A stretch of 64,000 nt of DNA from Selaginella moellendorffii (lineage: Eukaryota; Plantae; Lycopodiophyta): assembly GCF_000143415.4 (NCBI RefSeq), contig NW_003314308.1, positions 186,001 through 250,000 of the forward strand, in the 5' to 3' direction. The translations under genes were made by a program, and so were the position numbers. The notes beneath the pieces are model-generated. The model was not told where the DNA came from. It did no database searches and was given only the letters and a program-made list of their open reading frames with translations. Numbering within the stretch: position 1 is the stretch's first letter; the number at the start of each line of letters is the position of its first letter. This document shows positions 1 through 12,600 of the stretch, piece by piece.

Positions 1-11
1 TAACTTTCCAG

Positions 12-141
12 ATCCAACGTTGTGGAGGCTTACTCTCAGGTGCTTAACATCGTCGAGGCAGAGTATAGTCAAGACGATATCAAAACTTTCCCTATCATCA
101 GCATTACAGAACTGCAAGCTCACCTCGACTCCCTCGGCTAA
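12..141 (+). CDS. Probable last coding exon of a gene starting upstream of the window (unknown product)
   Basis: Acceptor-like TTTCCAG ends at 11. An open frame SNVVEAYSQVLNIVEAEYSQDDIKTFPIISITELQAHLDSLG* ends TAA 139-141. A GTAAGT...TGCAG intron-like segment follows at 151-201. Confidence 0.45.
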
Positions 142-443
142 TTTCTGTGCGTAAGTTCTTCACAAAAATTATCGCTTCTAACTCAAGCCCTTGATGTGCA
201 GGATCAGCTCTATGATTTTCACACGAAGTTTAATGAAAGTGAAAAGCTTTTATGTCATGCTCATGTCAGGAGAACCCGTCTTTACAAGCAAAGCGTGAGC
301 TCTTGGGTGCTGAGAAGGATCTAGAATAGGTGAGCGAGTTTATAAAGGCGGCGGTGATATTCTAAGCTTGACCACTGGAGCGACTGGCCCTCGTCCAACA
401 AGTAAGGCGCTCTCTTTCTTTTCCTACTATTTCAATCGAGAGA

Positions 444-1246
444 ATGAGCCAAGTGGTGAGATTTGCCACGGCAGGAGCTAGGATCCCCAGCAGCAGCAAG
501 AGATTTGCATCGACAACCACTGCTGCGGCGGCCATGGGAGGCGGAAATCTCAAGATGATCGCCGTTTCCGGGTCTCTGAGGAAGGGCTCTTTCAACAGTG
601 GTCTCGTACGCGCAGGTAAGATCTTTGTTTTAGCTATGTTGGTAATTGTGTTGCTGCTTGTAGCACGCGAGATTGTCAAGGAGAGCTTCGAAGATGTGGA
701 GCTAGAGCATGTGGACATTTCCCAGCTCCCTTTCCTCAACACGGACTTGGAGCAAGACGGGCAATTTCCGGGGGTCGTGGAGGATTTTCGAGCTAAAGTC
801 CTTGGGGCGGACGCTGTGCTGTTTGCAAGCCCGGAGTACAATTACTCCATCACAGGTGGAACTTTTCTTTGCGCTCTCACAGTTTTTCTTTGTCCTCTTT
901 CTTGATTTCTTTCCGCATTTTATGTTCTTGTTTGTTGCTTGCAGCTCCACTCAAGAACGCATTGGATTGGGCGTCGAGGAATCCAAATGCGTGGGCCGGG
1001 AAGCCAGCCGCAATCGTGAGCGCTGGGGGCGGGTTTGGAGGCGGCAGAGCCCAATATCATCTGCGACAGGTGGGAGTTTTCCTCGACCTCCATTTCATCA
1101 ACAAGCCCGAGCTGTTTGTTGCGGCGTTTCAAGCGCCGCCAAAGTTCGACTCGGACGGGAATCTCGTGGATCCGGACACTAGAACCCGTCTCAAAGCCCT
1201 TCTTCTCGCCTTGCGCCAGTGGACCCTCAAACTAAAAGAATGCTAA
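444..1246 (+). CDS. NQR: NAD(P)H:quinone oxidoreductase / NADPH-dependent FMN reductase (3 exons: 444-615, 664-855, 945-1246)
   Basis: Motifs IAVSGSLRKGSFN, ADAVLFASPEYNYS, APLKNALDWASR, WAGKPAAIVSAGGGFGGGRAQYHLRQ. GT-AG introns at 616-663 and 856-944. A second in-frame ATG lies at 534. Confidence 0.93.
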
Positions 1247-1305
1247 CAGCCATTAAGATAAAACTCCCGAACTGAAGATTTCTGTTTAGAGTTTAAGAAA
1301 TATAC

Positions 1306-1329
1306 CTAGAATATTCATGAATATTCTAG
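1306..1329. promoter_or_regulatory. Perfect 24-bp palindrome matching a four-unit heat shock element
   Basis: CTAGAATATTCATGAATATTCTAG is self-complementary and contains aGAAt-aTTCa-tGAAt-aTTCt. It lies downstream of the NQR stop, so function is uncertain. Confidence 0.4.
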
Positions 1330-2161
1330 TATTCAATGGCTTTTAGCATTTCTTTAAAACACATACAAATAACTTCAAAATCAAGGTTTAATTCGCTTAT
1401 TACTAACTAGTATTGCAGGAGATATGTAGTGGAATTAGTTAATAAAAAATGATTATTATTTTAGATATTTTTATTATCTTGATATGTTAAGCCATACTAA
1501 AAGGGTACACTACTAAACCAAATATTATATATAGTACACATTAAACAACACCAAGAATAATAATTATAAAATATATTTTGCAGGAAAATGTAGGTCACTA
1601 CCCAGACCTATACAAAAGTAATAAATAATTACTAAGAAAAGTCGTTTATCAATATAAATATCTACCAAATCCTTGAATCAGCATTGATTGAATATTTAGG
1701 AAAATAAAAATTATGTGATACAAACATTTTATAGTATTGAAAGTACTCTTTTCATGAGTAGCATGAAAAGATCTAAAACATTACTACTTAATTCAAAAGT
1801 ATATTCTACCCAGACTCAGAATAATAACATTAGAAGTTCTTGTGTTAAAATAGTTTATATACTATCCATACAGAAAAAAATGTATATAGTTAAATTCACT
1901 TTAAACTAAAGCAATATTTAATTAGGCAGCCAAAACTTGCTTTGTCACAAAAGAATGAATTTGGTTTATGACCAATGCAACCAAGACAACATTTTCCATC
2001 TCAGGACATGGCAACACAATGCTGGTGTTTACTTAGATACTTTGTTGTTTACAGATAATTCTATCAAAACTTGGATTTAGTAAAATATTGTACTTTTGAT
2101 ACATATGTTATTTTTCTGGGTTCATAACTCACTATATCCAGTTAAACAGTACTGTTGTAAT

Positions 2162-2385
2162 AGACATGCACACACACACATAGATATATATGTATATATA
2201 CATATATACATATACATGTATATATGTATACATATGTATATATATGTATGTATGTATATCTGTATATATATGTATATATATGTATATATATATCTATATA
2301 TATGTATATATATATATATGTGTGTATATGTATATGTGTATATATATGTATATATGTATTTATATTTATATTTATATATACATCA
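2162..2385. repeat. Compound (TA)/(TATG)/(CA) microsatellite
   Basis: Directly visible. It explains the spurious Y/I/M-rich ORFs at 2096-2427. Confidence 0.95.
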
Positions 2386-4023
2386 GATAAAATTAATTAT
2401 AATTTATATTTTATAAAATATATTTAAAATAATAAAATTTAAAGAACACCAATGTATTATTACTTAGAACCAGACTAAAGTAAAACAAATATTAATAAAA
2501 ATAATAATTATTAAAATATATTTTAGATAAAAATATTAGTCTTTACTTGGATATATGAATATATTTAGATATTTCCCCTACAAACATTACTAAACAATAA
2601 TATTATTGATATTACATTCAAAGTATTACTTATTTGGAAATATCAAAAATAAATTTTTTTTACTAATATACATACTAGAACTGTGTTATTTTAATTGTAA
2701 TATTAAATTTATTCTTAATAATTACTTGTGAAAAGATATATTAGTAATATTAATAATTATTCATAGTTAGTAATATATTAATTACTATTTCTATATAGTT
2801 AATAGAGTGGCCACTTGCCTCCTCTTTTCCTGATTTCCTCCATGTCCTTAAAGATCATCTACGTTGAAAACTTTGGCGTTAGTTCCAACATTTCAAGGAA
2901 CTGATACATTGACAAAGTAGCAAATTCCAGATTGCTCATGATCTCCTTGACGAAGAAAGCAAGCCAGAAGCCATGCAAGGAAAAATCCCGTACTTTCCTT
3001 CTCCCTTGACATTATTCTGACCCTTCTTATATGATTTCCTCTGGATGAGGATCAGATTTATGCTGAAATGGATCCACCTTTTTAACTTGAAAACTTGTTT
3101 AACTGAGGTGTTTGTAACTGTGTGTTTCTAAAACCCTCTCCCCGGCTTATTTCTGATGTGAACCTTCAGGAAAATAAAGTACATCCTTCAGATGGATAGA
3201 AACTCTTGTGTAGCTCTCCCAAAGGGATTTAAAGTTCTGCAAAGATGGTGACGTGCTCATTGCACCATTCTCTTCTGGTTAATCCATTTCCTTTGCGTGA
3301 AATTATCTCTTGAAAGCGGGAAGCTTCATCATTCAACCTCCTACATGAAATGCCCAAGACTGGAGCTACTCCTCGAGGCACCTGATCACGGACAAGCATC
3401 TAAAGCACAGATCTCTTTGCCGCATGATGGTATTGCTACACTTCAAAACCCTGAAGGGTGAGGTTCTTCATACCTTCGTCAACAGGATCTGAAAGGTAAG
3501 AGAATGCTGGTAATGCTAGGTGCGCGGTGACACAGGAAGCATGATATCCGGAGGGGGACCTAGGAATGATCTATGCCACAATTTGCCCACCCTGTTCTTC
3601 GTTATGTTCGATGCCCTCACTGCGTCTCGCGGGCTTTTTCAAAAGGAATTTACTAGTCTCTATTTTCTTTTCAGCAATGCATGACTAAGATGCCAATGAA
3701 TAGCTTTGATTCTTTGCCTGTGATGAAACTATTAATTTTTCTTGCCGTCACATACATGATCATCTTCAAACGGACAAGATCGATCGATTTAAAGGCCTTC
3801 TCTCATCTCTCGTACACATAAGCAGGACCTACAGACGCGAGATCTTCAAGTATAACGCAATATTCTTAGCTCTTTCATGTGTAGCAGTGCTTTTAAAACT
3901 TTGTTAATCGATAAATAAAGTTTGATTAGTGTGAGATGACAAGGACTTCACAGCATTTATAAAGATTATAAGCAAGGATCCAAGCTTAGAGTTGGAAAAA
4001 GAAGTCTATAGAGGAGAGAAAGA

Positions 4024-5015
4024 ATGACGAGTTTCGTCACGTTTATTCTTGTTGCTGTGATCTCCAGCGTTTGCAATGCGCAAGACTTGAGTTTCACAGC
4101 TACGACTCCCGGCCTCACCAAAGGCAAGCCGAACACCTTCATTGGAACCACTGGCGATGAGATCGCGTCGTCTCTTCTCGCATCAAAGACTCCCGCAATG
4201 CTTTGGGGCTCGGTTCCCGCGAGTGCAATCACCAACGTCTGCCAGAAGATTTCCCAGACTGGAAGGCAGGAATACACTGCCAAGATAGATGGCGACTGGG
4301 GAGGATCCGAGGACCTCAAGCTAAAGGTGACAAGTACCTTGGTTTTTTCTCATGCTGACGACTGGAAAGATGGTCGCAACCGGTGGCTCCAGATTCATCC
4401 GGGACACAGTTCGTGTTCACAGACAACTATGGCCGCAAGAGTGCTGTAAGTTTAGCGAGCTCCATGTGATTATCTTGCAGTAACAAAATTCACTGCTGCT
4501 TACCAGATTGTTTGCCCAAGTAACGCTGGAGGAAGTGGCTGTGGCGTGTACATGACTGGCAGTGACGTGGACAGTATCTACAACAAGCGCTTGGAACTCG
4601 TCTGTTCCTCGCAAACGCTTCCAGCGATCAGGCAGATCAGGCAGCTCGAAGATTCTTGCTTGGTGAGTGCTGGGCTTGGCGCGGCTGCTGTGCGTGAGGG
4701 CGTGCTTCCCACGCGATGCAACGGTGCAAACTTCCACGGGCGAGACGAAGACGATGAGCCAGCTCCAAATCGGTGACAAGGTATCCATACTGATCACCGC
4801 TTCCACCAAACTTTTTTCTCTGGTCCTGTCGTGAAGGTTGGGACGCTCAAGAACGGGAGGCTCGACTTCAGTGAAATCTACGCTTTCGGGCACCGAGACA
4901 GAAGAGTGACTTCGTCAACCTGGAACTATCCCACTCAAAGACCCTTGAGCTCTCGCGCCTGCATTTCCTGCCAACGCTGCTCAAAGCTGGCCACATTACA
5001 AAGGTGTCGTTGTAA
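4024..5015 (+). pseudogene. Secreted protein with C-terminal Hedgehog/intein (Hint, Hog-type) domain; frame-disrupted in this copy
   Basis: Signal peptide MTSFVTFILVAVISSVCNA|QD. ACFPRDATVQTSTGETKTMSQLQIGDK at 4700-4780, then intron 4781-4836, then VGTLKNGRLDFSEIYAFGHRD (4837-4899). After a frame change comes DFVNLELSHSKTLELSRLHFLP (4908 on), with stop at 5013-5015. The pieces do not join in one frame with canonical splice sites. Confidence 0.78.
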
Positions 5016-6604
5016 TGTGCTGCCGGGCCCCCATCAAGTGAGAGAGAAATGAGAGAACTTGTTAGCTCGCAAAGGATGTTGTAGCCACCAGCAGCAGAGA
5101 AGATATGTGGTGATTGAGGCCATTCTCAAAAAACTTAAATATTCCTGATCTCATCACCACTCTTGTCAGGTCACATTTTTTTCTATGGCCCACTCTAGTG
5201 CTGACTGATTCTTGGAGAACTGATTAAGGAATGAGCATCCCGATGCTGCTGCTAGATCAAGATCTAAGTGCCTTGTCTGGATCACACTAGCCCCGTTTTG
5301 TCTAAAGCTGAACATGTGACTGGCTTTCTAACATTGCAAATAGGAGTTTATATTGCTTATTTTTTTCCCTAAGAACAGAGACATGGCCTCCATCTCCACA
5401 AGAGAGGCTCAAGGAATTCTATCAGCTCACTGTCTTAACTGAGGAATAATATAAATAAAATAGTATAAATAATTTTAAAATAAATATGATAATATTATTA
5501 TAAAATTATATAAATAATAGATTACTTATGAAGTTAATTTTATAAAGACTGAAACTACAAAATCCCAAAGAAATTGCAGCTTAGGGCAGTAAATTATCTT
5601 ATAATAATGTCCACAATCTACTTTTTAATATTATTATTATTAATTTTTTTTAAGGTCTTGCAATGTCAACCTAGTGACATTATTATTATAACATGTTTAA
5701 AGATCACTAGCACTCAACTAGACACAATCACCTCAAAGGACAAGAGCCTATTTGTATGACTTTGTAGGATTTCAGTTCTAAGGGTTCATTAGAATTGGTA
5801 AGAAATACACAATTTATTATTTTCAGTAAAACTATTAAAACCAATAATTTTTATTTATGTTTTTTAAATTTATTTTACATCCCTAGATTACGAATTAATG
5901 TATTCTGATGGAATTAGAGACTGACAATCCAATACATGCTTTTGAAGCCTTCTGCTTATTTATATTTCTCCACCTTGCTTTAATTTATAACATTAAAATA
6001 TAATTGAACTGATTATTAAATTCTATGCTTGAATATTTATTATTTACGTACTATAGACTGTAATAATATTTTTAATTGGAATTATATAACACCAAGCGGG
6101 CTAAAGGTGGATACACCTAAAATATGCTTGTATATTCTGGGATATTCTACCATTTATTGTTATCAAGAATAATCTTGTACTTATAATTTATAATTATTAA
6201 GCATTTTATTGTATATTCTAGTTTATTATACTATTTACAGGTTATTATATAGTAAGAAAAAGTTTTTTCTTAAAACTTATAAATGTGTTTATAATTATAG
6301 ATTTCAATTGGATTAATAAATAATAAGAACTACTATTAAGCAAGAAAAGCATTGCTAGTAGCAATTATTATTTCTTACTTTAAAGTAATATTACACAATG
6401 CTTTAAAGTTTGCATATATGTCAATTATCCTTAATAAAACCATACCAATAGTTTTACATTTTACAACTCATGAGTTATAATATAAGATGTTATAACTAGC
6501 TTATAAAATAAATATTTAAGAAAGACTTGTGTTTGATAATTACTCTAATAGTTTAATAATTAGATAAAATATACTAAACTTGGATTTTAATTAAATTTAG
6601 GCAC

Positions 6605-9600
6605 TGTGAGTGCATGAAATATGGAAATGGAATACAGAAATTTACATATCAATTAGCCCAAAAACCTAATATAGGAGCGAGTGGTCTAAATTAAAACTAA
6701 TCCAATAACTACTAAATTCCCACTATACTAATGTTAGTATATAGCATTATAGCTGTAAATTTAGACTTCACACCATCCCCTATTCTTAGAATGATGGAAA
6801 GTTAGAATTCTCTAGTCGATGGGCCGAGGTCTAGAAGAACATTAGGAGGAGGCATCAATAAATTTATAAATGGTGTTATTTGTTCTAGATCCTTTTGTAT
6901 GAAGTGTTTTAGCTGTTGCATATACACAAGTTTTGAAGGATCAACTTATTGAATGTCATACTGAACCTTATAAACTTACGGTCTAATTTGCTACAACACT
7001 TGATATGGTCCCTTCCCTTGAGCAAAGAGCCCCTTAGAAAAATTACATATCATAAGATTAGGAAAATGGGCTAACACAAAATCATCTATTTTATACTTAA
7101 AATGGACGATAATGAGAATTATAGCACCATTGTCATCCCACTTATATGAGTTCTTAGTGTTTGGCAGACTTTACTTAAATTAGTGGAAGAATGCTCATTA
7201 AATACTGGCAGCTTGTGGCAATTGCGAAAGCAAACTCAACTCCGTTGGTAGTATCGGATCATGATCATATAAGAATTTATATGGTGAAGCATCAACAAAA
7301 CTTTGCACATCTATGATATATGCATATCAAAGAGACGGTAAATAATTATCTGAATTCGAATGTTAAAAGTTCATGTACTTCGCAATTATCCCTTTGAAGG
7401 TCTAAACTACTTGTTCCACTAAACCCTTTGACTATGAATGATAAACACCTGTGAAAGTATGGTGTATCTTTAATTTAGATGTTAAAATGCAAAATGCCTT
7501 AGCTATAAATGCAAGATCATTATTCAAAAGAATTCACACCAGATAGAAATGCTGAAATACTACTTGATTGAGAAGTATTCAATAGTAGTTGCAGATGCAC
7601 TAGCAAAAGCATTAACTTCCACCCAATGAGTCAAGTAGTTAAAAATAATAATGACATATTTATTGCTAGTAGTCGACTGTGGAAAAGATCCTATCAAATT
7701 AAATGCCACTAACTTAAATGGATGGGATATTACAATTGACTTTAACTGTCTTTCCACAACATAAGGGGGAGTATTATAAATTTGGCACCAAACACAACTA
7801 CACATATACTAAATAATATTATGTTGCATCTTTGGCCAATAGAAAAACTTGTATAGCTTCTTAATCATATGATAATTTCTATATGTTTACATAGAATAGG
7901 AAAATCATAGTAGACATAGAAAAAGTGTGGAATAAAGATTAAAGGTACCATTAGCTGTAAATGATAATTAGAATTATCTCCACAAAATAAAGAAAATTAT
8001 CTTTAAAGGGATATTAAAACTGTAAATGTCTAAATAGCAAGTCATCAACAAGTGATGTAACAAATGATATAAAATTTTCAAACCCATCATAAAGCCTTTG
8101 GATCCATTATTTAAAATTTTGAGCCTCACAAACTTTATCAATAGAAGGTAAATCTTGCTTTGCACCTTGTATATACTGAACATCAAGTACAACAACTGCC
8201 AACAACATGGAATCCTTGTCCAAAAAATCCATAAATTCTAAAATAACAAGTTTGTCAGAAACATGAGAAGAGAGTGAAGAAGGAAGAGGAACTTGAGAAA
8301 GGGCATCAATATCAACCATAGAACTCCCCTAGTGATGAATAACATCAAAATTATATATCTGAAATTTTAAAACCCACCAAGCAATATATTCAACCAAGTT
8401 TTACTTCAATAGTGAAATAACTATAGTATGATCGCCTTTTAAATATTTAAGAACTATGTAGATATGCATGAAATTTCTCAAAACCCCAAACTACTACTAA
8501 ACCCTCATTCTATATGATGGAGTAGTTCACTTTCGTTGGTTGTAATGTACAATTGATATATGCAATGGGATAGCACTGACTAAACATACTTGAGCTCTCT
8601 TGCATCGACACACCTCCAAGATTAATATAATAAGCATCCACGTGCGAAATAAAAGGTTGAGTGTAATTAAGATATGTTAAAACTAGAGGAATCGTCAATA
8701 GCTCTTTGAGATCCATAAATGTTTGCTCACAATCTATACACTAGATGAAAGATGATATTGACAACTTCAATATTACTTACAACAGTGTAATATGATATAA
8801 AAGATGATCTATATTTGATTGCAAAAAATTAGTTTAAAGCTAAAGCAATCAAAGTCTGTGTTTATGTCCAAGGACACCACTTATCTTAGGTACTATGCAA
8901 CACTTTTTAGGCAAGGTTGTGAGATATAAATTTCTAAGCCTCAAAGTGGAGCTAGAAGTGAAGCTAAAGGTTTACCAAAGTGTTGGTGATGGAATCCTCC
9001 TCACATGGGAAGCTTTGTTTCCAACCCTCCATTATTGACCTTGAAGAAGCTCACAAGAAGAATCACCTCCTTAAGAAGTCATCAAAACTGATAAACTTGA
9101 AGCAAGGTCATGCACAACACCATTATTTCAAACTCCCAATCCTTGGCAAGAATCACCTTACAAGTCTTGGGGATGAGGAGAGTCTCCATCACCTTGCTAA
9201 AGCTCACCACTGTTTATGGAGCATGCCTCCAAACCTCTGAAAAGAGAACTGTGGAGTAATGAAGGATAAGTCTAAGCAACAAGCCAAGGACTCAAATACT
9301 TAGATCTCCTTCCTCCACCATTTGATCTTCCTAAAATTCTGAATCTCTATAATCAGATTCAACTTCTCACTGACGTGATCTTGAAATAAATGCATCAACT
9401 AGGAGAATCAGTTGCTTGAACTTATATTAGACTTCACTTGCTTAAACCATGAAACTTGAGTAGATAGATCTCGTAGCCCAACTGTTATATCTTTGTGAAA
9501 TCTTGTAAGCGCAATCTCCCTAGTGTCTTCTAGCTTTTCACTATAGTGATTTTCAATCAAATGGCACATAAAGTAGCTGCAATTGACAAATTCTTGCCCC

Positions 9601-12600
9601 AAACCTTAGTTTGCCCCATCAGAAAAGATGTGTCACCCAGAACCATTCATTTGGTGGTGTTTACATCCATTCCCAAGCACCTGCTTCCACAAGAAAAACT
9701 AGATCTATGCTTCTTTCTTAACTTTTTTTAGACCATTTTGCCCTCCTCTTTTTTCCAATTGTAGAACACAAGCTGCTACAGTAGTAATCATTCTAGTCCA
9801 CACTTGTGATGCCACCACCTTTGGTCCTTCATGTTTATCTTTGAAGATTCTATTGTACCTAGCTTTCCAAACCTCCCACAATGTAATACCTTGTAGCAAG
9901 TTTACTAACTCCAAGGATACTCCTTTTGTGTCTGTTCTAGTTGTGTTGAGTTAGTCAAACCATAGTACCCTTTTTGTGTTGAGGACTATTTCTAAGAGTC
10001 TATTTTATTTCACATTCCCAACAATTTCACCCCATACTAGCACTTCATATGTGAGGCACATTTGTCTTTGGGAATGCTGTTGTAGCAACTAACATGTGTT
10101 TCTTCACGCATCTTATGCACTCTCACATTCCCAAAGTATGTGCCTTTGTGTTTCCTTTGCCCCACATTTATCACATGATTGGTCTTGGAAATGTATATTT
10201 TGTTTGGATGGCATAACCAACCACATTGTCTTCGTTGGCCATATTCCTTTCCACAACCCTTTTAATGTAGTCTATTGTATCATATCTTGTATATTGGCAT
10301 GTTTCATTCTTGTTATAAGTAATGAATCATTACTCGGCTGAATAAGTCATCTTCCCAATTTTGTCTCATATGCAAATAATTCTTCCTTCTTTTTCCTTTG
10401 TTAATTCCATTCCACTAGATCCTAAACCAACTTGCATAATTTTTGTTGTCTAAACCTACAGCTTAGTTATGAAACCTTCTATTATTGTTAGATCCATCAT
10501 TGCCATTTTCTTATCCATCCTTATTACCCAGATCAGTTTTGCTTTTGACATGTTTGGTCTTATACTTTCTTCAAGAACCTTGAATGGTAGCCATTGGCTA
10601 GTTCAGCCAACATTGAAACTAACATATTTAGCCTGATCTTGAGTTGCCATATATATATATATATCACTTTTATCTATCATATTGGTGTCATTTGTTTGAC
10701 TTCCTTAATGCTTTGGTTGCAATACTTTTGTGTTGCATTGGCTTTTGCAAAGGTTCTCATTTTAACACTATACATATCTTAACATGCTTTGTCTATTCCT
10801 CTATCTTTTGTTTCTCCCAAGCATTTCCCTTTATATTGGAATAGTTTATTGAGAAAGATTGGTTGTTTGTCTAGCTCATAATTGTTTGTAGGTTTTCTCT
10901 TTTTCGTCATCCCCTTGAATTCTTTCCATAATCTTAAAAGTTTTTTTGAGAAAGTATTCGATTTTGGCATCTTTAAAGTGCAGTTAGTGAAGAGTCAGCT
11001 TTCATTTTTTCCCCAATTCTACTTTATGTGCTTTAGTCTATTAGGGATAACTTTTAATAGTTGGTGGCACAATAGTAATTTCCATAGCTGATTTCTAGGC
11101 ATGTTCATGTGATGAAAGATTTTAAATAACAAAGCCTTGCATTGCTCTTCTATATCAATTATATTTATCCCTCCATCCTGCTTTGCTCTTATGACCAAGC
11201 TTCACCCAATATTTGCACCTCCTCTTGAGACTATTGTTTGCCCCTTCCATATATATGTTTTGATTAGCTTATTTATATCCTTCAAAGTTTTTTTTTTCTA
11301 AATTCTATGATGTTGCCAAAAATCATATTGCCCCTAGTACAATGTTATTTGCCACTACACATTTTGTCAAGGACAACTTTTGTGATGCATAGACTATTAA
11401 TTGATCTCTAAGTTTGTCAACTACTTTTTAATTTTGTGGGAGGGTTTTTGTAATTTTAGCCAATTTCAAACCCAAATACCTTATTGTCTCACCTTGTTTT
11501 AACCACTTGACATCCCACTCCTCTCCCCAACTTGGTAGCTCCGAATTTGGCAACCATATTCCCACCAATGTTCCCTAGTTTATTTTAGAGCATGCCGCTA
11601 AATTATAAAAATCCAAATCCTCCTTAACCTTGCTAATATTTCTCCACCCAAGAAATGGAAGTTATCAATCCAGAAAACGCCAATAAATGTGACCAACTTT
11701 ATTATATGCTCAATAGTGGATATCACAACCATAATTATATCTTCACCTTTGTCCTTGAACTTGAGCAACAACAACACCAATCTCCATTGGAATAGAACTA
11801 TCTCCCATAGGAAGTGAAGTTGAAGGGCTTGCAACAAGAAGTGAAAGAGATGATGTTTCATAATGTTATGCCACATAAAGATCATCATCAAGGGTGGCTG
11901 GAGCAAGTGCATGCACAAGTGTTATAAAATCTTGACAAAGTGCTAACCACAATATTCCCAACTTAATTTACTTTAACATATTTGGCTCCTTATGAAGCAA
12001 GAAACTTTAGAAACAAATGTTAAATTATATCACTGACCTAAATGGCTATTGACAAAGACAATGCAATCATTGGAAGGCATTATTATAATCATTGGCATAT
12101 CCAAATATATTTTTGAAGATGTCTGAGAGAATGCTCCAATCTGCATGAGTGGTTATGCTCAAACCATTGTACCACTACAGTGCCATCTTTCAAAACATGT
12201 TAAAAACTCATGCAAATGCCGAATATCATCCTAAGAATGATATATGGCAATCATCATAAAGTGATTGAAGTAGTAGTATATATCCTCCTTAAGATTCCCA
12301 CAGAAGAACTTTAGTAGGATGTGAGGATTGACAACAAAAGTAGAAGGAGCTATACCACACACCGTGAATATCACTATCAACTAGGTTTGAATGTTCCACT
12401 ACAATTGCATAACATCAAGCAATTGCACTAAGAGTCAAAGGAAGAGGAGGCTATTACTTTACCATTAAGATGAACAAAAAGGATAAAGCAAAAGAGAAGA
12501 AATTTAAAATGCTATAAGAAAAAAGGAGATTTAGATGACACAAAAGCTAGATCTATACCAAAATCTTAAATTAAAACACTCCTTAAAGACAATTAAAGTT

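What the first reader, a model, noticed from the sequence alone, without database searches (positions are those of the whole stretch)
4024..5015. Hedgehog-type Hint (Hog) autoprocessing domain on a secreted plant protein, hidden across reading frames
Seen in the sequence: a signal peptide and an N-terminal region I cannot assign, which has several Cys (IVCPSNAGGSGCGVY). These are followed by A-CFPRDATVQTSTGETKTMSQLQIGDK|VGTLKNGRLDFSEIYAFGHRD..DFVNLELSHSKTLELSRLHFLP. Established: this matches the Hedgehog C-terminal Hint pattern, namely CF(P)xxAxV...K.MxxLxxGDxV, then (Y/F)SxV/IxxFxHRD, then block-B LxL(T/S)xxH. There, the first Cys self-cleaves the precursor and, in Hedgehog, attaches a sterol to the released N-terminal fragment. 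Flowering plants have no Hedgehog pathway, and their Vint proteins have a vWA N-terminus, which is not seen here. Hog-type Hints are known from scattered non-animal eukaryotes, so the family may not be new, but the N-terminal cargo looks uncharacterised. Inference: this is a family of secreted, self-cleaving, possibly sterol-modified proteins in a non-seed plant. The ORF track misses it because the CF start lies in a different frame.
Basis: partly seen in the sequence, partly recalled or inferred. Interest (0 to 1): 0.9.

Follow-up and report, generated by a model that had tools for sequence, protein, structure and literature searches.

The report
Decayed Selaginella Hog gene copy
The stretch is a broken, truncated copy (pseudogene) of a spikemoss gene for a secreted protein with a Hedgehog-type self-cleaving domain; this gene family, including its unassigned front part, was published in 2008 and has intact, expressed sister genes elsewhere in the genome.

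Summary
Window 4024-4990 (+) carries a signal peptide, a Cys-containing N-terminal region and recognisable Hedgehog-type Hint motifs (Pfam PF01079, E 2.5e-7 on the first Hint piece).

The reason it is "hidden across reading frames" is decay, not an overlooked gene. The genome is Selaginella moellendorffii. I aligned the window with two intact paralogues, LOC9636441 and LOC9658011 (466 and 468 aa, both PF01079). Against them the window copy has:
- deletions of 11, 7, 2 and 7 nt and a 6-nt insertion in coding exons;
- a ~175-nt deletion that removes the hydrophobic linker exon;
- loss of everything after 4990, which is the C-terminal half of Hint plus the adduct/sterol-recognition region.

The small indels are shared with the other haplotype (SELMODRAFT_421866), so they are not assembly errors. 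All RNA contigs that cover the sites carry the paralogues' letters.

The family is already known. It combines a signal peptide, a conserved upstream domain and a Hog domain, and occurs in mosses, Selaginella and ferns. Bürglin described it in 2008 (pPp Hog, pSl Hog), and UniProt annotates the members as Hint-domain proteins. The scan has also flagged other Hog genes elsewhere in this genome.

The cargo fold remains unassigned, and no plant Hog has been tested for cleavage or sterol attachment.

Verdict: an ordinary, unprocessed pseudogene of a known family, of low interest.

The parts
4024..4326 (+). Exon 1, still an open frame. It encodes the signal peptide (4024-4080, cleavage probably after CNA) and the first part of the conserved N-terminal cargo domain.
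   Evidence: ORF. It is 92.7% identical in DNA to exon 1 of LOC9636441 (L003) and 99.3% to the other haplotype L001. phmmer hits to full-length plant Hog proteins.
4327..4369 (+). Intron 1 (43 nt, GT..AG), retained.
   Evidence: Position matches intron 1 of L002 and L003 in the DNA alignment.
4370..4445 (+). Exon 2 remnant. An 11-nt deletion near 4385-4394 shifts the frame and removes the invariant Cys of the GGC motif.
   Evidence: both L002 and L003 have GCTGTGGTGC[C/T] there. The RNA contig carries the extra letters (table 5c). The deletion is shared with L001.
4446..4506 (+). Intron 2 (61 nt, GT..AG), retained.
   Evidence: Joint 4445->4507 in the paralogue's RNA contigs. Alignment.
4507..4662 (+). 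Exon 3 remnant (IVCPSNAGGSGCGVY...). It has a 7-nt deletion after 4600 and a 6-nt insertion at 4630-4635, a net change of -1.
   Evidence: Shared with L001.
4662..4663 (+). Junction of a window-specific ~175-nt deletion. It removed the end of exon 3, an intron, and most of the exon for the hydrophobic Gly/Cys-rich linker that precedes the cleavage site.
   Evidence: L001 8640-8814 and L002 6945-7123 have no counterpart in the window. RNA contig X1 has about 114 extra letters here (table 8).
4663..4780 (+). End of the linker and start of Hint (block A). A 2-nt deletion lies after 4690. The catalytic Cys codon is at 4703-4705 (A|CFPRDATV...IGDK).
   Evidence: Pfam Hint E 2.5e-7. The 'GC' is put in behind 4690 in every RNA contig (table 4)..
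4781..4836 (+). Intron (56 nt, GT..AG), retained.
   Evidence: Joint 4777->4834 (cut +3) in RNA contigs of the paralogue..
4837..4990 (+). Middle Hint exon with a 7-nt deletion after 4898 that shifts the frame. The His codon at 4888-4890 sits at the general-base position (D46/D303 of fly Hedgehog). The SxxH block B has its Ser codon at 4953-4955 and its His codon at 4962-4964.
   Evidence: CTTGGAG is put in behind 4898 in all RNA contigs. Residue mapping comes from the alignment of P0022 to 1AT0/6TYY.
4991..5135 (+). 145 nt of unrelated filler. It stands where the other haplotype has 553 nt, namely the last intron and the last exon (Hint blocks F/G, the adduct/sterol-recognition region and the hydrophobic tail).
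   Evidence: tblastn of P0003, P0005 and P0011 finds no C-terminal Hog sequence anywhere in the 64-kb window. The filler matches nothing in the window or the loci. RNA contigs run on unlike the window after 4990 (table 7).

Best explanation
Window 4024-4990 is an unprocessed (DNA-duplicated, intron-retaining) pseudogene of the Selaginella moellendorffii Hog family. Its closest intact relatives are the paralogues LOC9636441 and LOC9658011.

The ancestral gene had six exons. Its product had a signal peptide, a ~150-aa Cys-containing domain of unassigned fold, and a ~45-aa hydrophobic Gly/Cys-rich linker. These were followed by a Hedgehog-type Hint domain starting at Cys-Phe-Pro, a helical adduct-recognition region and a hydrophobic tail.

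In this copy, small deletions (11, 7, 2 and 7 nt) and a 6-nt insertion broke the frame before the two haplotypes diverged. The window's haplotype then also lost the linker exon (~175 nt) and the whole last exon. It cannot make a self-cleaving protein.

By inference from Hedgehog chemistry, the intact paralogues most likely enter the ER and form a thioester at the Cys. They would then release the N-terminal fragment by attack of a nucleophile positioned by the His that occupies the general-base position. Whether that nucleophile is a phytosterol, another lipid or water is unknown.
For: - Species and gene models: the window's own model P0002 is SELMODRAFT_420557, the allelic model P0003 is SELMODRAFT_421866, and the intact cluster is P0022/P0025/P0027/P0030.
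- L001 is syntenic with the window over at least 11 kb, so it is the other haplotype.
- Three- and four-way DNA alignments show every lesion against both intact paralogues, and show which lesions L001 shares.
- P0002 has no Pfam hit and P0003 is below the Hint cut-off, whereas P0022 scores 5e-31.
- No C-terminal Hog sequence exists in the window.
- At 4690 and 4898, all RNA contig depth in the three of the four runs that cover these sites carries the paralogues' extra letters. The contigs continue after 4990 with the last-exon sequence of L002.
- Introns are retained at the paralogues' positions.
- Family architecture and invariant residues come from the 11-protein alignment, hydropathy, AF2 models and the alignment to fly Hh-C 1AT0/6TYY.
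Against: - Exon 1 is still a clean 101-codon ORF with a good signal peptide.
- dN/dS against the intact paralogues is about 0.5. This is the same as between the two intact paralogues (0.58), so it gives no sign of relaxed constraint.
- Logan contigs drop rare variants, so weak transcription of this copy is not excluded.
- The two window-specific deletions rest on one assembly only.
Confidence: 0.88

Rival explanations
1. The locus is a live gene that now makes only a truncated secreted N-domain protein without a Hint domain, as in the annotated 244-aa model SELMODRAFT_420557. It might act, for example, as a decoy or a new small secreted protein.
For: Exon 1 is intact with a signal peptide. A gene model exists in GenBank. 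dN/dS is not elevated relative to the intact pair.
Against: The 11-nt deletion in exon 2 breaks the homologous frame after residue ~106 and removes an invariant Cys of the domain. In the other haplotype, exon 1 itself carries a 1-nt deletion. No contig specific to this copy appears in four RNA runs. The model has no Pfam domain.
Confidence: 0.06
2. The gene is intact and the frame breaks are assembly or sequencing errors.
For: The two largest lesions (the ~175-nt deletion and the 3' replacement) are seen only in this haplotype's assembly.
Against: The 11-nt, 7-nt/+6-nt, 2-nt and 7-nt indels are identical in the independently assembled second haplotype L001 (98.8% identity, no gaps, over 4663-4990). 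L001 has further lesions of its own.
Confidence: 0.03
3. It is a functional Hog gene that is read across frames by unusual splicing or programmed frameshifting, which is the reader's 'hidden gene'.
For: Selaginella introns are short (43-61 nt here). A 36-nt GT..AG interval exists between 4664 and 4699.
Against: The intact paralogues have continuous exon sequence at all three frame changes. Even if the frames were joined, the Hint blocks F/G and the adduct-recognition region are absent from the window, so no active Hog domain could result.
Confidence: 0.02

Closest known systems
Selaginella moellendorffii LOC9636441 (XP_002974348.1, SELMODRAFT_442486, 466 aa) and LOC9658011 (XP_024534947.1, 468 aa), both 'Hint domain-containing protein'
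   Same: Same gene family and exon-intron layout. DNA identity to the window is 92.7% and 87.3% in exon 1 and 96.8% in the middle Hint exon. They share the signal peptide, the N-domain and the CFP(G/R)DATVQTSTGETK start of Hint.
   Different: They are intact, score Pfam Hint at 5e-31 (P0022) and are represented in RNA contigs. The window copy has five frameshifting indels, lacks the linker exon and lacks the last exon.
pPp Hog (Physcomitrella patens, JGI 232119) and pSl Hog (Selaginella lepidophylla EST EH093067) of Bürglin 2008, BMC Genomics 9:127
   Same: They have the same 'conserved upstream region' (…TTP…PNTFIGT…ASSLL…TPA(M/L)LWG…GGC…VCP.NAG..GCG…) behind a signal peptide and in front of a Hog domain. 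The sequences are printed in that paper's additional file. P0032 is the current Physcomitrium entry.
   Different: Those are expressed or intact genes of other species. The paper gave no function for the upstream region and did not list this locus.
Drosophila Hedgehog C-terminal autoprocessing domain (PDB 1AT0; D303H variant 6TYY)
   Same: The Hint fold and motifs align over 143 residues (E 7e-13 and 3.5e-14). This covers the Cys-Phe start, the T/SxxH block and the …GTIVVN.VAAS… block.
   Different: The plant family has His where fly Hh has the general base Asp303 (D46), as in the engineered D303H enzyme. It has Val where Hh has Cys143. It also adds a hydrophobic pre-cleavage linker and a C-terminal hydrophobic tail. 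The cargo is unrelated to the Hedge domain.
Short-cargo Selaginella Hog genes (pSm Hog of Bürglin 2008; 'warthog protein 4', SELMODRAFT_412024)
   Same: The Hog domain is about 50% identical to P0022 over half its length.
   Different: They are 279-281 aa, and their match to P0022 covers only about half of it, the Hog part. pSm Hog, as printed in Bürglin's file, has only a short hydrophobic stretch before the CFPGD start, not the ~150-aa N-domain. They form a different subfamily.

Membership tests
Hog domain (Hedgehog-type Hint + adduct/sterol-recognition region; Pfam PF01079) | Hint block A beginning with the nucleophilic Cys (Cys-Phe-Pro...) | tested here: met
   Window 4667-4834 scores E 2.5e-7, 30.9 bits (cut-off 29.7), profile positions 11-53. 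The Cys codon is at 4703-4705.
Hog domain (Hedgehog-type Hint + adduct/sterol-recognition region; Pfam PF01079) | Block B T-x-x-H and a general base at the D46 position | tested here: met
   S-R-L-H lies at 4953-4964 and His at 4888-4890. The mapping comes from P0022 aligned to 1AT0/6TYY and from the family alignment. These are present only as remnants in two different frames.
Hog domain (Hedgehog-type Hint + adduct/sterol-recognition region; Pfam PF01079) | C-terminal Hint blocks (GLYNP.TL.GTIVV.GV.AS) that complete the fold | tested here: not met
   tblastn of P0003, P0005 and P0011 finds none in the 64-kb window. The alignment shows the last exon replaced by filler after 4990.
Hog domain (Hedgehog-type Hint + adduct/sterol-recognition region; Pfam PF01079) | Helical adduct/sterol-recognition region after Hint | tested here: not met
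   Absent from the window. It is present and helical in the intact paralogue model (residues 382-467, low confidence).
Hog domain (Hedgehog-type Hint + adduct/sterol-recognition region; Pfam PF01079) | One open reading frame joining cargo to Hint | tested here: not met
   Frameshifting indels of -11, -7/+6, -2 and -7 nt and a ~175-nt deletion, relative to two intact paralogues.
Hog domain (Hedgehog-type Hint + adduct/sterol-recognition region; Pfam PF01079) | Autocleavage at the Cys, with or without adduct transfer | not testable with these tools
   This is a biochemical assay. No paper in the searched library reports it for any plant Hog.
Plant long Hog subfamily (pPp Hog / pSl Hog type, Bürglin 2008) | Signal peptide plus the conserved upstream domain with four invariant Cys | tested here: inconclusive
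   Exon 1 and the IVCP..GCG part are present. The invariant Cys corresponding to C73, C133 and C142 of P0022 are kept, but C108 was removed by the 11-nt deletion. The locus is a member by descent and is no longer intact.
Processed (retro-copied) pseudogene | Loss of introns, poly(A) tail | tested here: not met
   Three introns are retained at the parental positions. This is therefore a duplicated, unprocessed pseudogene.

The most novel reading that the evidence does not exclude
This reading concerns the intact paralogues, not this dead copy. The land-plant long Hog proteins may use the His at the general-base position to esterify a phytosterol (or other membrane lipid) onto the end of the hydrophobic Gly/Cys-rich linker. 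That would release a lipid-anchored extracellular domain of a new fold, and would be protein sterylation outside animals. The engineered fly D303H enzyme keeps activity and accepts more sterols (PMC9163320). My evidence neither shows nor excludes this reading. The idea that Hog domains outside animals attach an adduct was already raised by Bürglin in 2008.
Probability: 0.2. Interest if true: 0.7.

Novelty: already known. Interest (0 to 1): 0.12.

Why it matters
For this locus, very little. It adds one decayed duplicate to a gene family that is already published and annotated.

It does show that the Selaginella long-Hog family has gained and lost copies: two intact paralogues about 11 kb apart in convergent orientation, this dispersed pseudogene, and further remnants.

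The family itself remains an open biochemical question. No plant Hog has been tested for autocleavage or for its adduct, and its ~150-aa cargo matches no solved structure. That question is better pursued with the intact genes LOC9636441 and LOC9658011, or with the Physcomitrium gene, which was the only one of this type found in the moss by Bürglin (2008) and.

Tried and rejected
- Other copies in the window: tblastn of the five peptide pieces found only the locus itself.
- Pfam on the short middle pieces (21 to 73 aa) gave nothing because they are too short or out of frame. Only the first Hint piece scores.
- dN/dS as a test of relaxed constraint was uninformative: about 0.5 for all pairs, including the intact pair. 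One 16-codon block was in the wrong frame but is nearly invariant.
- Cargo fold:
  - The AF2 model has a core pLDDT of 75-87.
  - Foldseek against PDB gave nothing better than E 0.04 and TM 0.3.
  - AFDB clusters gave one lead only, A0A150FYW7, an 'EF-hand domain-containing protein', at E 1.3e-5 and TM 0.41. I did not follow it.
  - ESM Atlas scores were at most 0.45, so no lead.
- Origin of the 145-nt filler at 4991-5135: no match in the window or the fetched loci.
- The look-up of encoding contigs had no record for the RefSeq protein P0022. The older GenBank models P0029 and P0025 gave the loci instead.
- Literature searches found no experimental work on plant Hog proteins. One moss paper matched only by unrelated words.
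- I considered and rejected a 36-nt intron between 4664 and 4699. The paralogues have continuous exon sequence there.

Full report
**1. What is in the sequence**

Window 4024-5015 lies in a G+C-richer island between AT-rich stretches.
- a 101-codon open exon from the ATG at 4024, with a hydrophobic leader ending CNA|QD;
- IVCPSNAGGSGCGVY from 4507;
- A-CFPRDATVQTSTGETKTMSQLQIGDK at 4700-4780, in the next frame;
- VGTLKNGRLDFSEIYAFGHRD at 4837-4899;
- SDFVNLELSHSKTLELSRLHFLP from 4905, in a third frame.

The 55-aa ORF at 4667-4834 matches Pfam Hint PF01079 at E 2.5e-7, which is above the curated cut-off. The other pieces are too short to score alone. No second copy is present in the 64-kb window.

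**2. Whose gene it is**

A phmmer search of exon 1 against 1.84 billion representatives found three models of this locus (P0001-P0003) and full-length relatives of 477-579 aa. Word-indexed searches and cluster look-ups named them.
- The window's own model is SELMODRAFT_420557 of Selaginella moellendorffii (P0002, 244 aa).
- P0003 is SELMODRAFT_421866.
- An intact cluster holds LOC9658011 (P0022, 468 aa), LOC9636441 (P0025, 466 aa), LOC9658546 and LOC9658545. All carry PF01079, and UniProt calls them 'Hint domain-containing protein'.

Relatives occur in the ferns Adiantum capillus-veneris and A. nelumboides and in the mosses Ceratodon purpureus and Physcomitrium patens.

**3. Why the frames change**

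I fetched three loci:
- the P0003 locus (L001, scaffold GL377619.1);
- the LOC9658011 locus (L002);
- the LOC9636441 locus (L003).

L002 and L003 lie on scaffold GL377589.1, about 11 kb apart and convergent. L001 is collinear with the window over at least 11 kb at 80-99% identity, so it is the other haplotype of the same locus.

The DNA alignments show the following lesions in the window copy relative to both intact paralogues:
- an 11-nt deletion in exon 2, which removes the invariant Cys of the GGC motif;
- a 7-nt deletion after 4600 and a 6-nt insertion at 4630-4635;
- a ~175-nt deletion at 4662/4663, which removes the end of exon 3, an intron and most of the linker exon;
- a 2-nt deletion after 4690, just before the catalytic Cys codon (4703-4705);
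- a 7-nt deletion after 4898, which removes the codons for LEQ after HRD;
- from 4991, 145 nt of unrelated filler. The other haplotype has 553 nt there, containing the last intron and the last exon.

The small indels are identical in L001. They therefore predate haplotype divergence and are not assembly errors. The ~175-nt deletion and the 3' loss are specific to the window's haplotype. L001 has lesions of its own: 6-nt and 1-nt deletions in exon 1, and 38-nt and 15-nt deletions in the last exon.

The three remaining introns (4327-4369, 4446-4506, 4781-4836) sit at the parental positions, so the copy arose by DNA duplication, not retroposition.

**4. Expression**

The RNA runs that share words with the stretch hold only 10-13% of them. 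When laid on the window, their long contigs are 90-95% alike. They carry GC behind 4690 and CTTGGAG behind 4898 at full depth. They hold about 114 extra letters at 4662/4663, and they continue after 4990 with the start of the last exon as in L002. They therefore come from the intact paralogues. No contig specific to this copy was seen. Contigs can hide rare transcripts, so weak transcription is not excluded.

**5. A test that did not discriminate**

dN/dS of the in-frame remnants against L003 and L002 is 0.50 and 0.42. It is 0.58 between the two intact genes, so the test says nothing either way.

**6. The family and its likely mechanism**

The architecture below is shown by the tools; the chemistry at the end of this section is inferred. 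An alignment of 11 full-length proteins shows this layout:
- a signal peptide;
- a ~150-aa domain with four invariant Cys;
- a basic stretch;
- a ~45-aa hydrophobic Gly/Ala/Cys-rich segment (Kyte-Doolittle up to about 2.0) that ends directly at the invariant Cys-Phe-Pro;
- a Hint domain with invariant His282 (in YAFGH), L304 and H308 (the T/SxxH block), and GLYNP.T..G...V.GV.AS.HS.WFLD;
- a helical tail region and, in most members, a terminal hydrophobic stretch.

P0022 scores 5e-31 on PF01079. It aligns over 143 residues to fly Hedgehog-C, with the D303H variant 6TYY as the best hit (E 3.5e-14) and wild-type 1AT0 next (7e-13). In that alignment:
- the plant His282 falls on the general-base Asp303 (D46);
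- Ser305/His308 fall on the TxxH block;
- Val falls on Cys143.

The review PMC9163320 reports that D303H keeps structure and activity and widens sterol tolerance.

AF2 models give a confident Hint core (pLDDT 76-88) and a helical, low-confidence C-terminal region. They also give a moderately confident alpha/beta cargo core (pLDDT 75-87).

By analogy with Hedgehog, the intact proteins probably undergo an N-to-S acyl shift at the Cys in the secretory pathway and release the cargo. The nucleophile (phytosterol, other lipid or water) is unknown.

**7. The cargo domain**

It has no Pfam family. Foldseek against PDB gave no match better than E 0.04 and the ESM Atlas gave no lead. There is one AFDB-cluster hit, to an 'EF-hand domain-containing protein', at E 1.3e-5 and TM 0.41. 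The fold is unassigned.

**8. What is already known**

Bürglin 2008 (PMC2362128) reported Hog genes in P. patens and Selaginella. [quoted passage not shown] 14). Its additional file prints pPp Hog with this architecture, and the S. lepidophylla EST pSl Hog, which is an orthologue of exactly this N-domain and linker.

The scan's own notes list several other Hog genes in this genome, and follow-ups reached the same view of the family. Full-text searches found no experimental study of a plant Hog.

**9. Verdict**

The motifs are real and correctly recognised as Hedgehog-type Hint. The locus, however, is a decayed, truncated, unprocessed pseudogene in both haplotypes. The family, including its cargo, has been in the literature since 2008 and is annotated. 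Interest in this locus is low. The open question, what plant Hog domains attach to their cargo, should be addressed with the intact paralogues.

Noticed in passing
L002:5577-5822 (scaffold GL377589.1, upstream of LOC9658011): Two short tblastn matches to Hog residues ~272-316 (53-56% identity) and ~417-439 (83%) lie about 450 nt upstream of the intact gene. They look like remnants of yet another decayed Hog copy.
   Followed up: no
L001:8001-9583 (other haplotype, SELMODRAFT_421866): The allelic copy shares the four small frameshifts but keeps the linker exon and the last exon. It has lesions of its own: 6-nt and 1-nt deletions in exon 1, and 38-nt and 15-nt deletions in the last exon. Its 349-aa gene model skips the Hint start and reads part of Hint out of frame.
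   Followed up: partly
P0022 residues 192-239 and equivalents in P0023, P0011, P0032: Every full-length family member has a ~45-aa hydrophobic Gly/Ala-rich segment with three conserved Cys that ends exactly at the scissile bond. Most also have a hydrophobic C-terminal tail. Hedgehog has neither. The released cargo would end in a membrane-like segment even without a lipid adduct.
   Followed up: partly
P0022 His282 (window codon 4888-4890): The plant family has an invariant His at the position of Hedgehog's general base Asp303/D46. The best PDB sequence match is the engineered D303H fly enzyme (6TYY). Cys143 of Hedgehog is Val in plants.
   Followed up: partly
AF2 model m81be0793a285 (P0022:20-237): The cargo domain's only structural lead is an AFDB cluster representative named 'EF-hand domain-containing protein' (A0A150FYW7, residues 101-235, E 1.3e-5, TM 0.41, 20% identity). 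This hints that the fold also occurs outside Hog proteins.
   Followed up: no
window 1-11514 versus L001:3832-16350: The two haplotypes are 94-99% identical in and near genes but only 80-84% identical in the AT-rich intergenic stretches (for example window 6013-11514). This is much more divergent than the genic parts.
   Followed up: no
window about 440-1250 (+): ORFs here are collinear with an L001 gene whose product carries FMN_red/Flavodoxin_2 domains (L001 4385-5097). This is an ordinary upstream neighbour, conserved in both haplotypes.
   Followed up: partly
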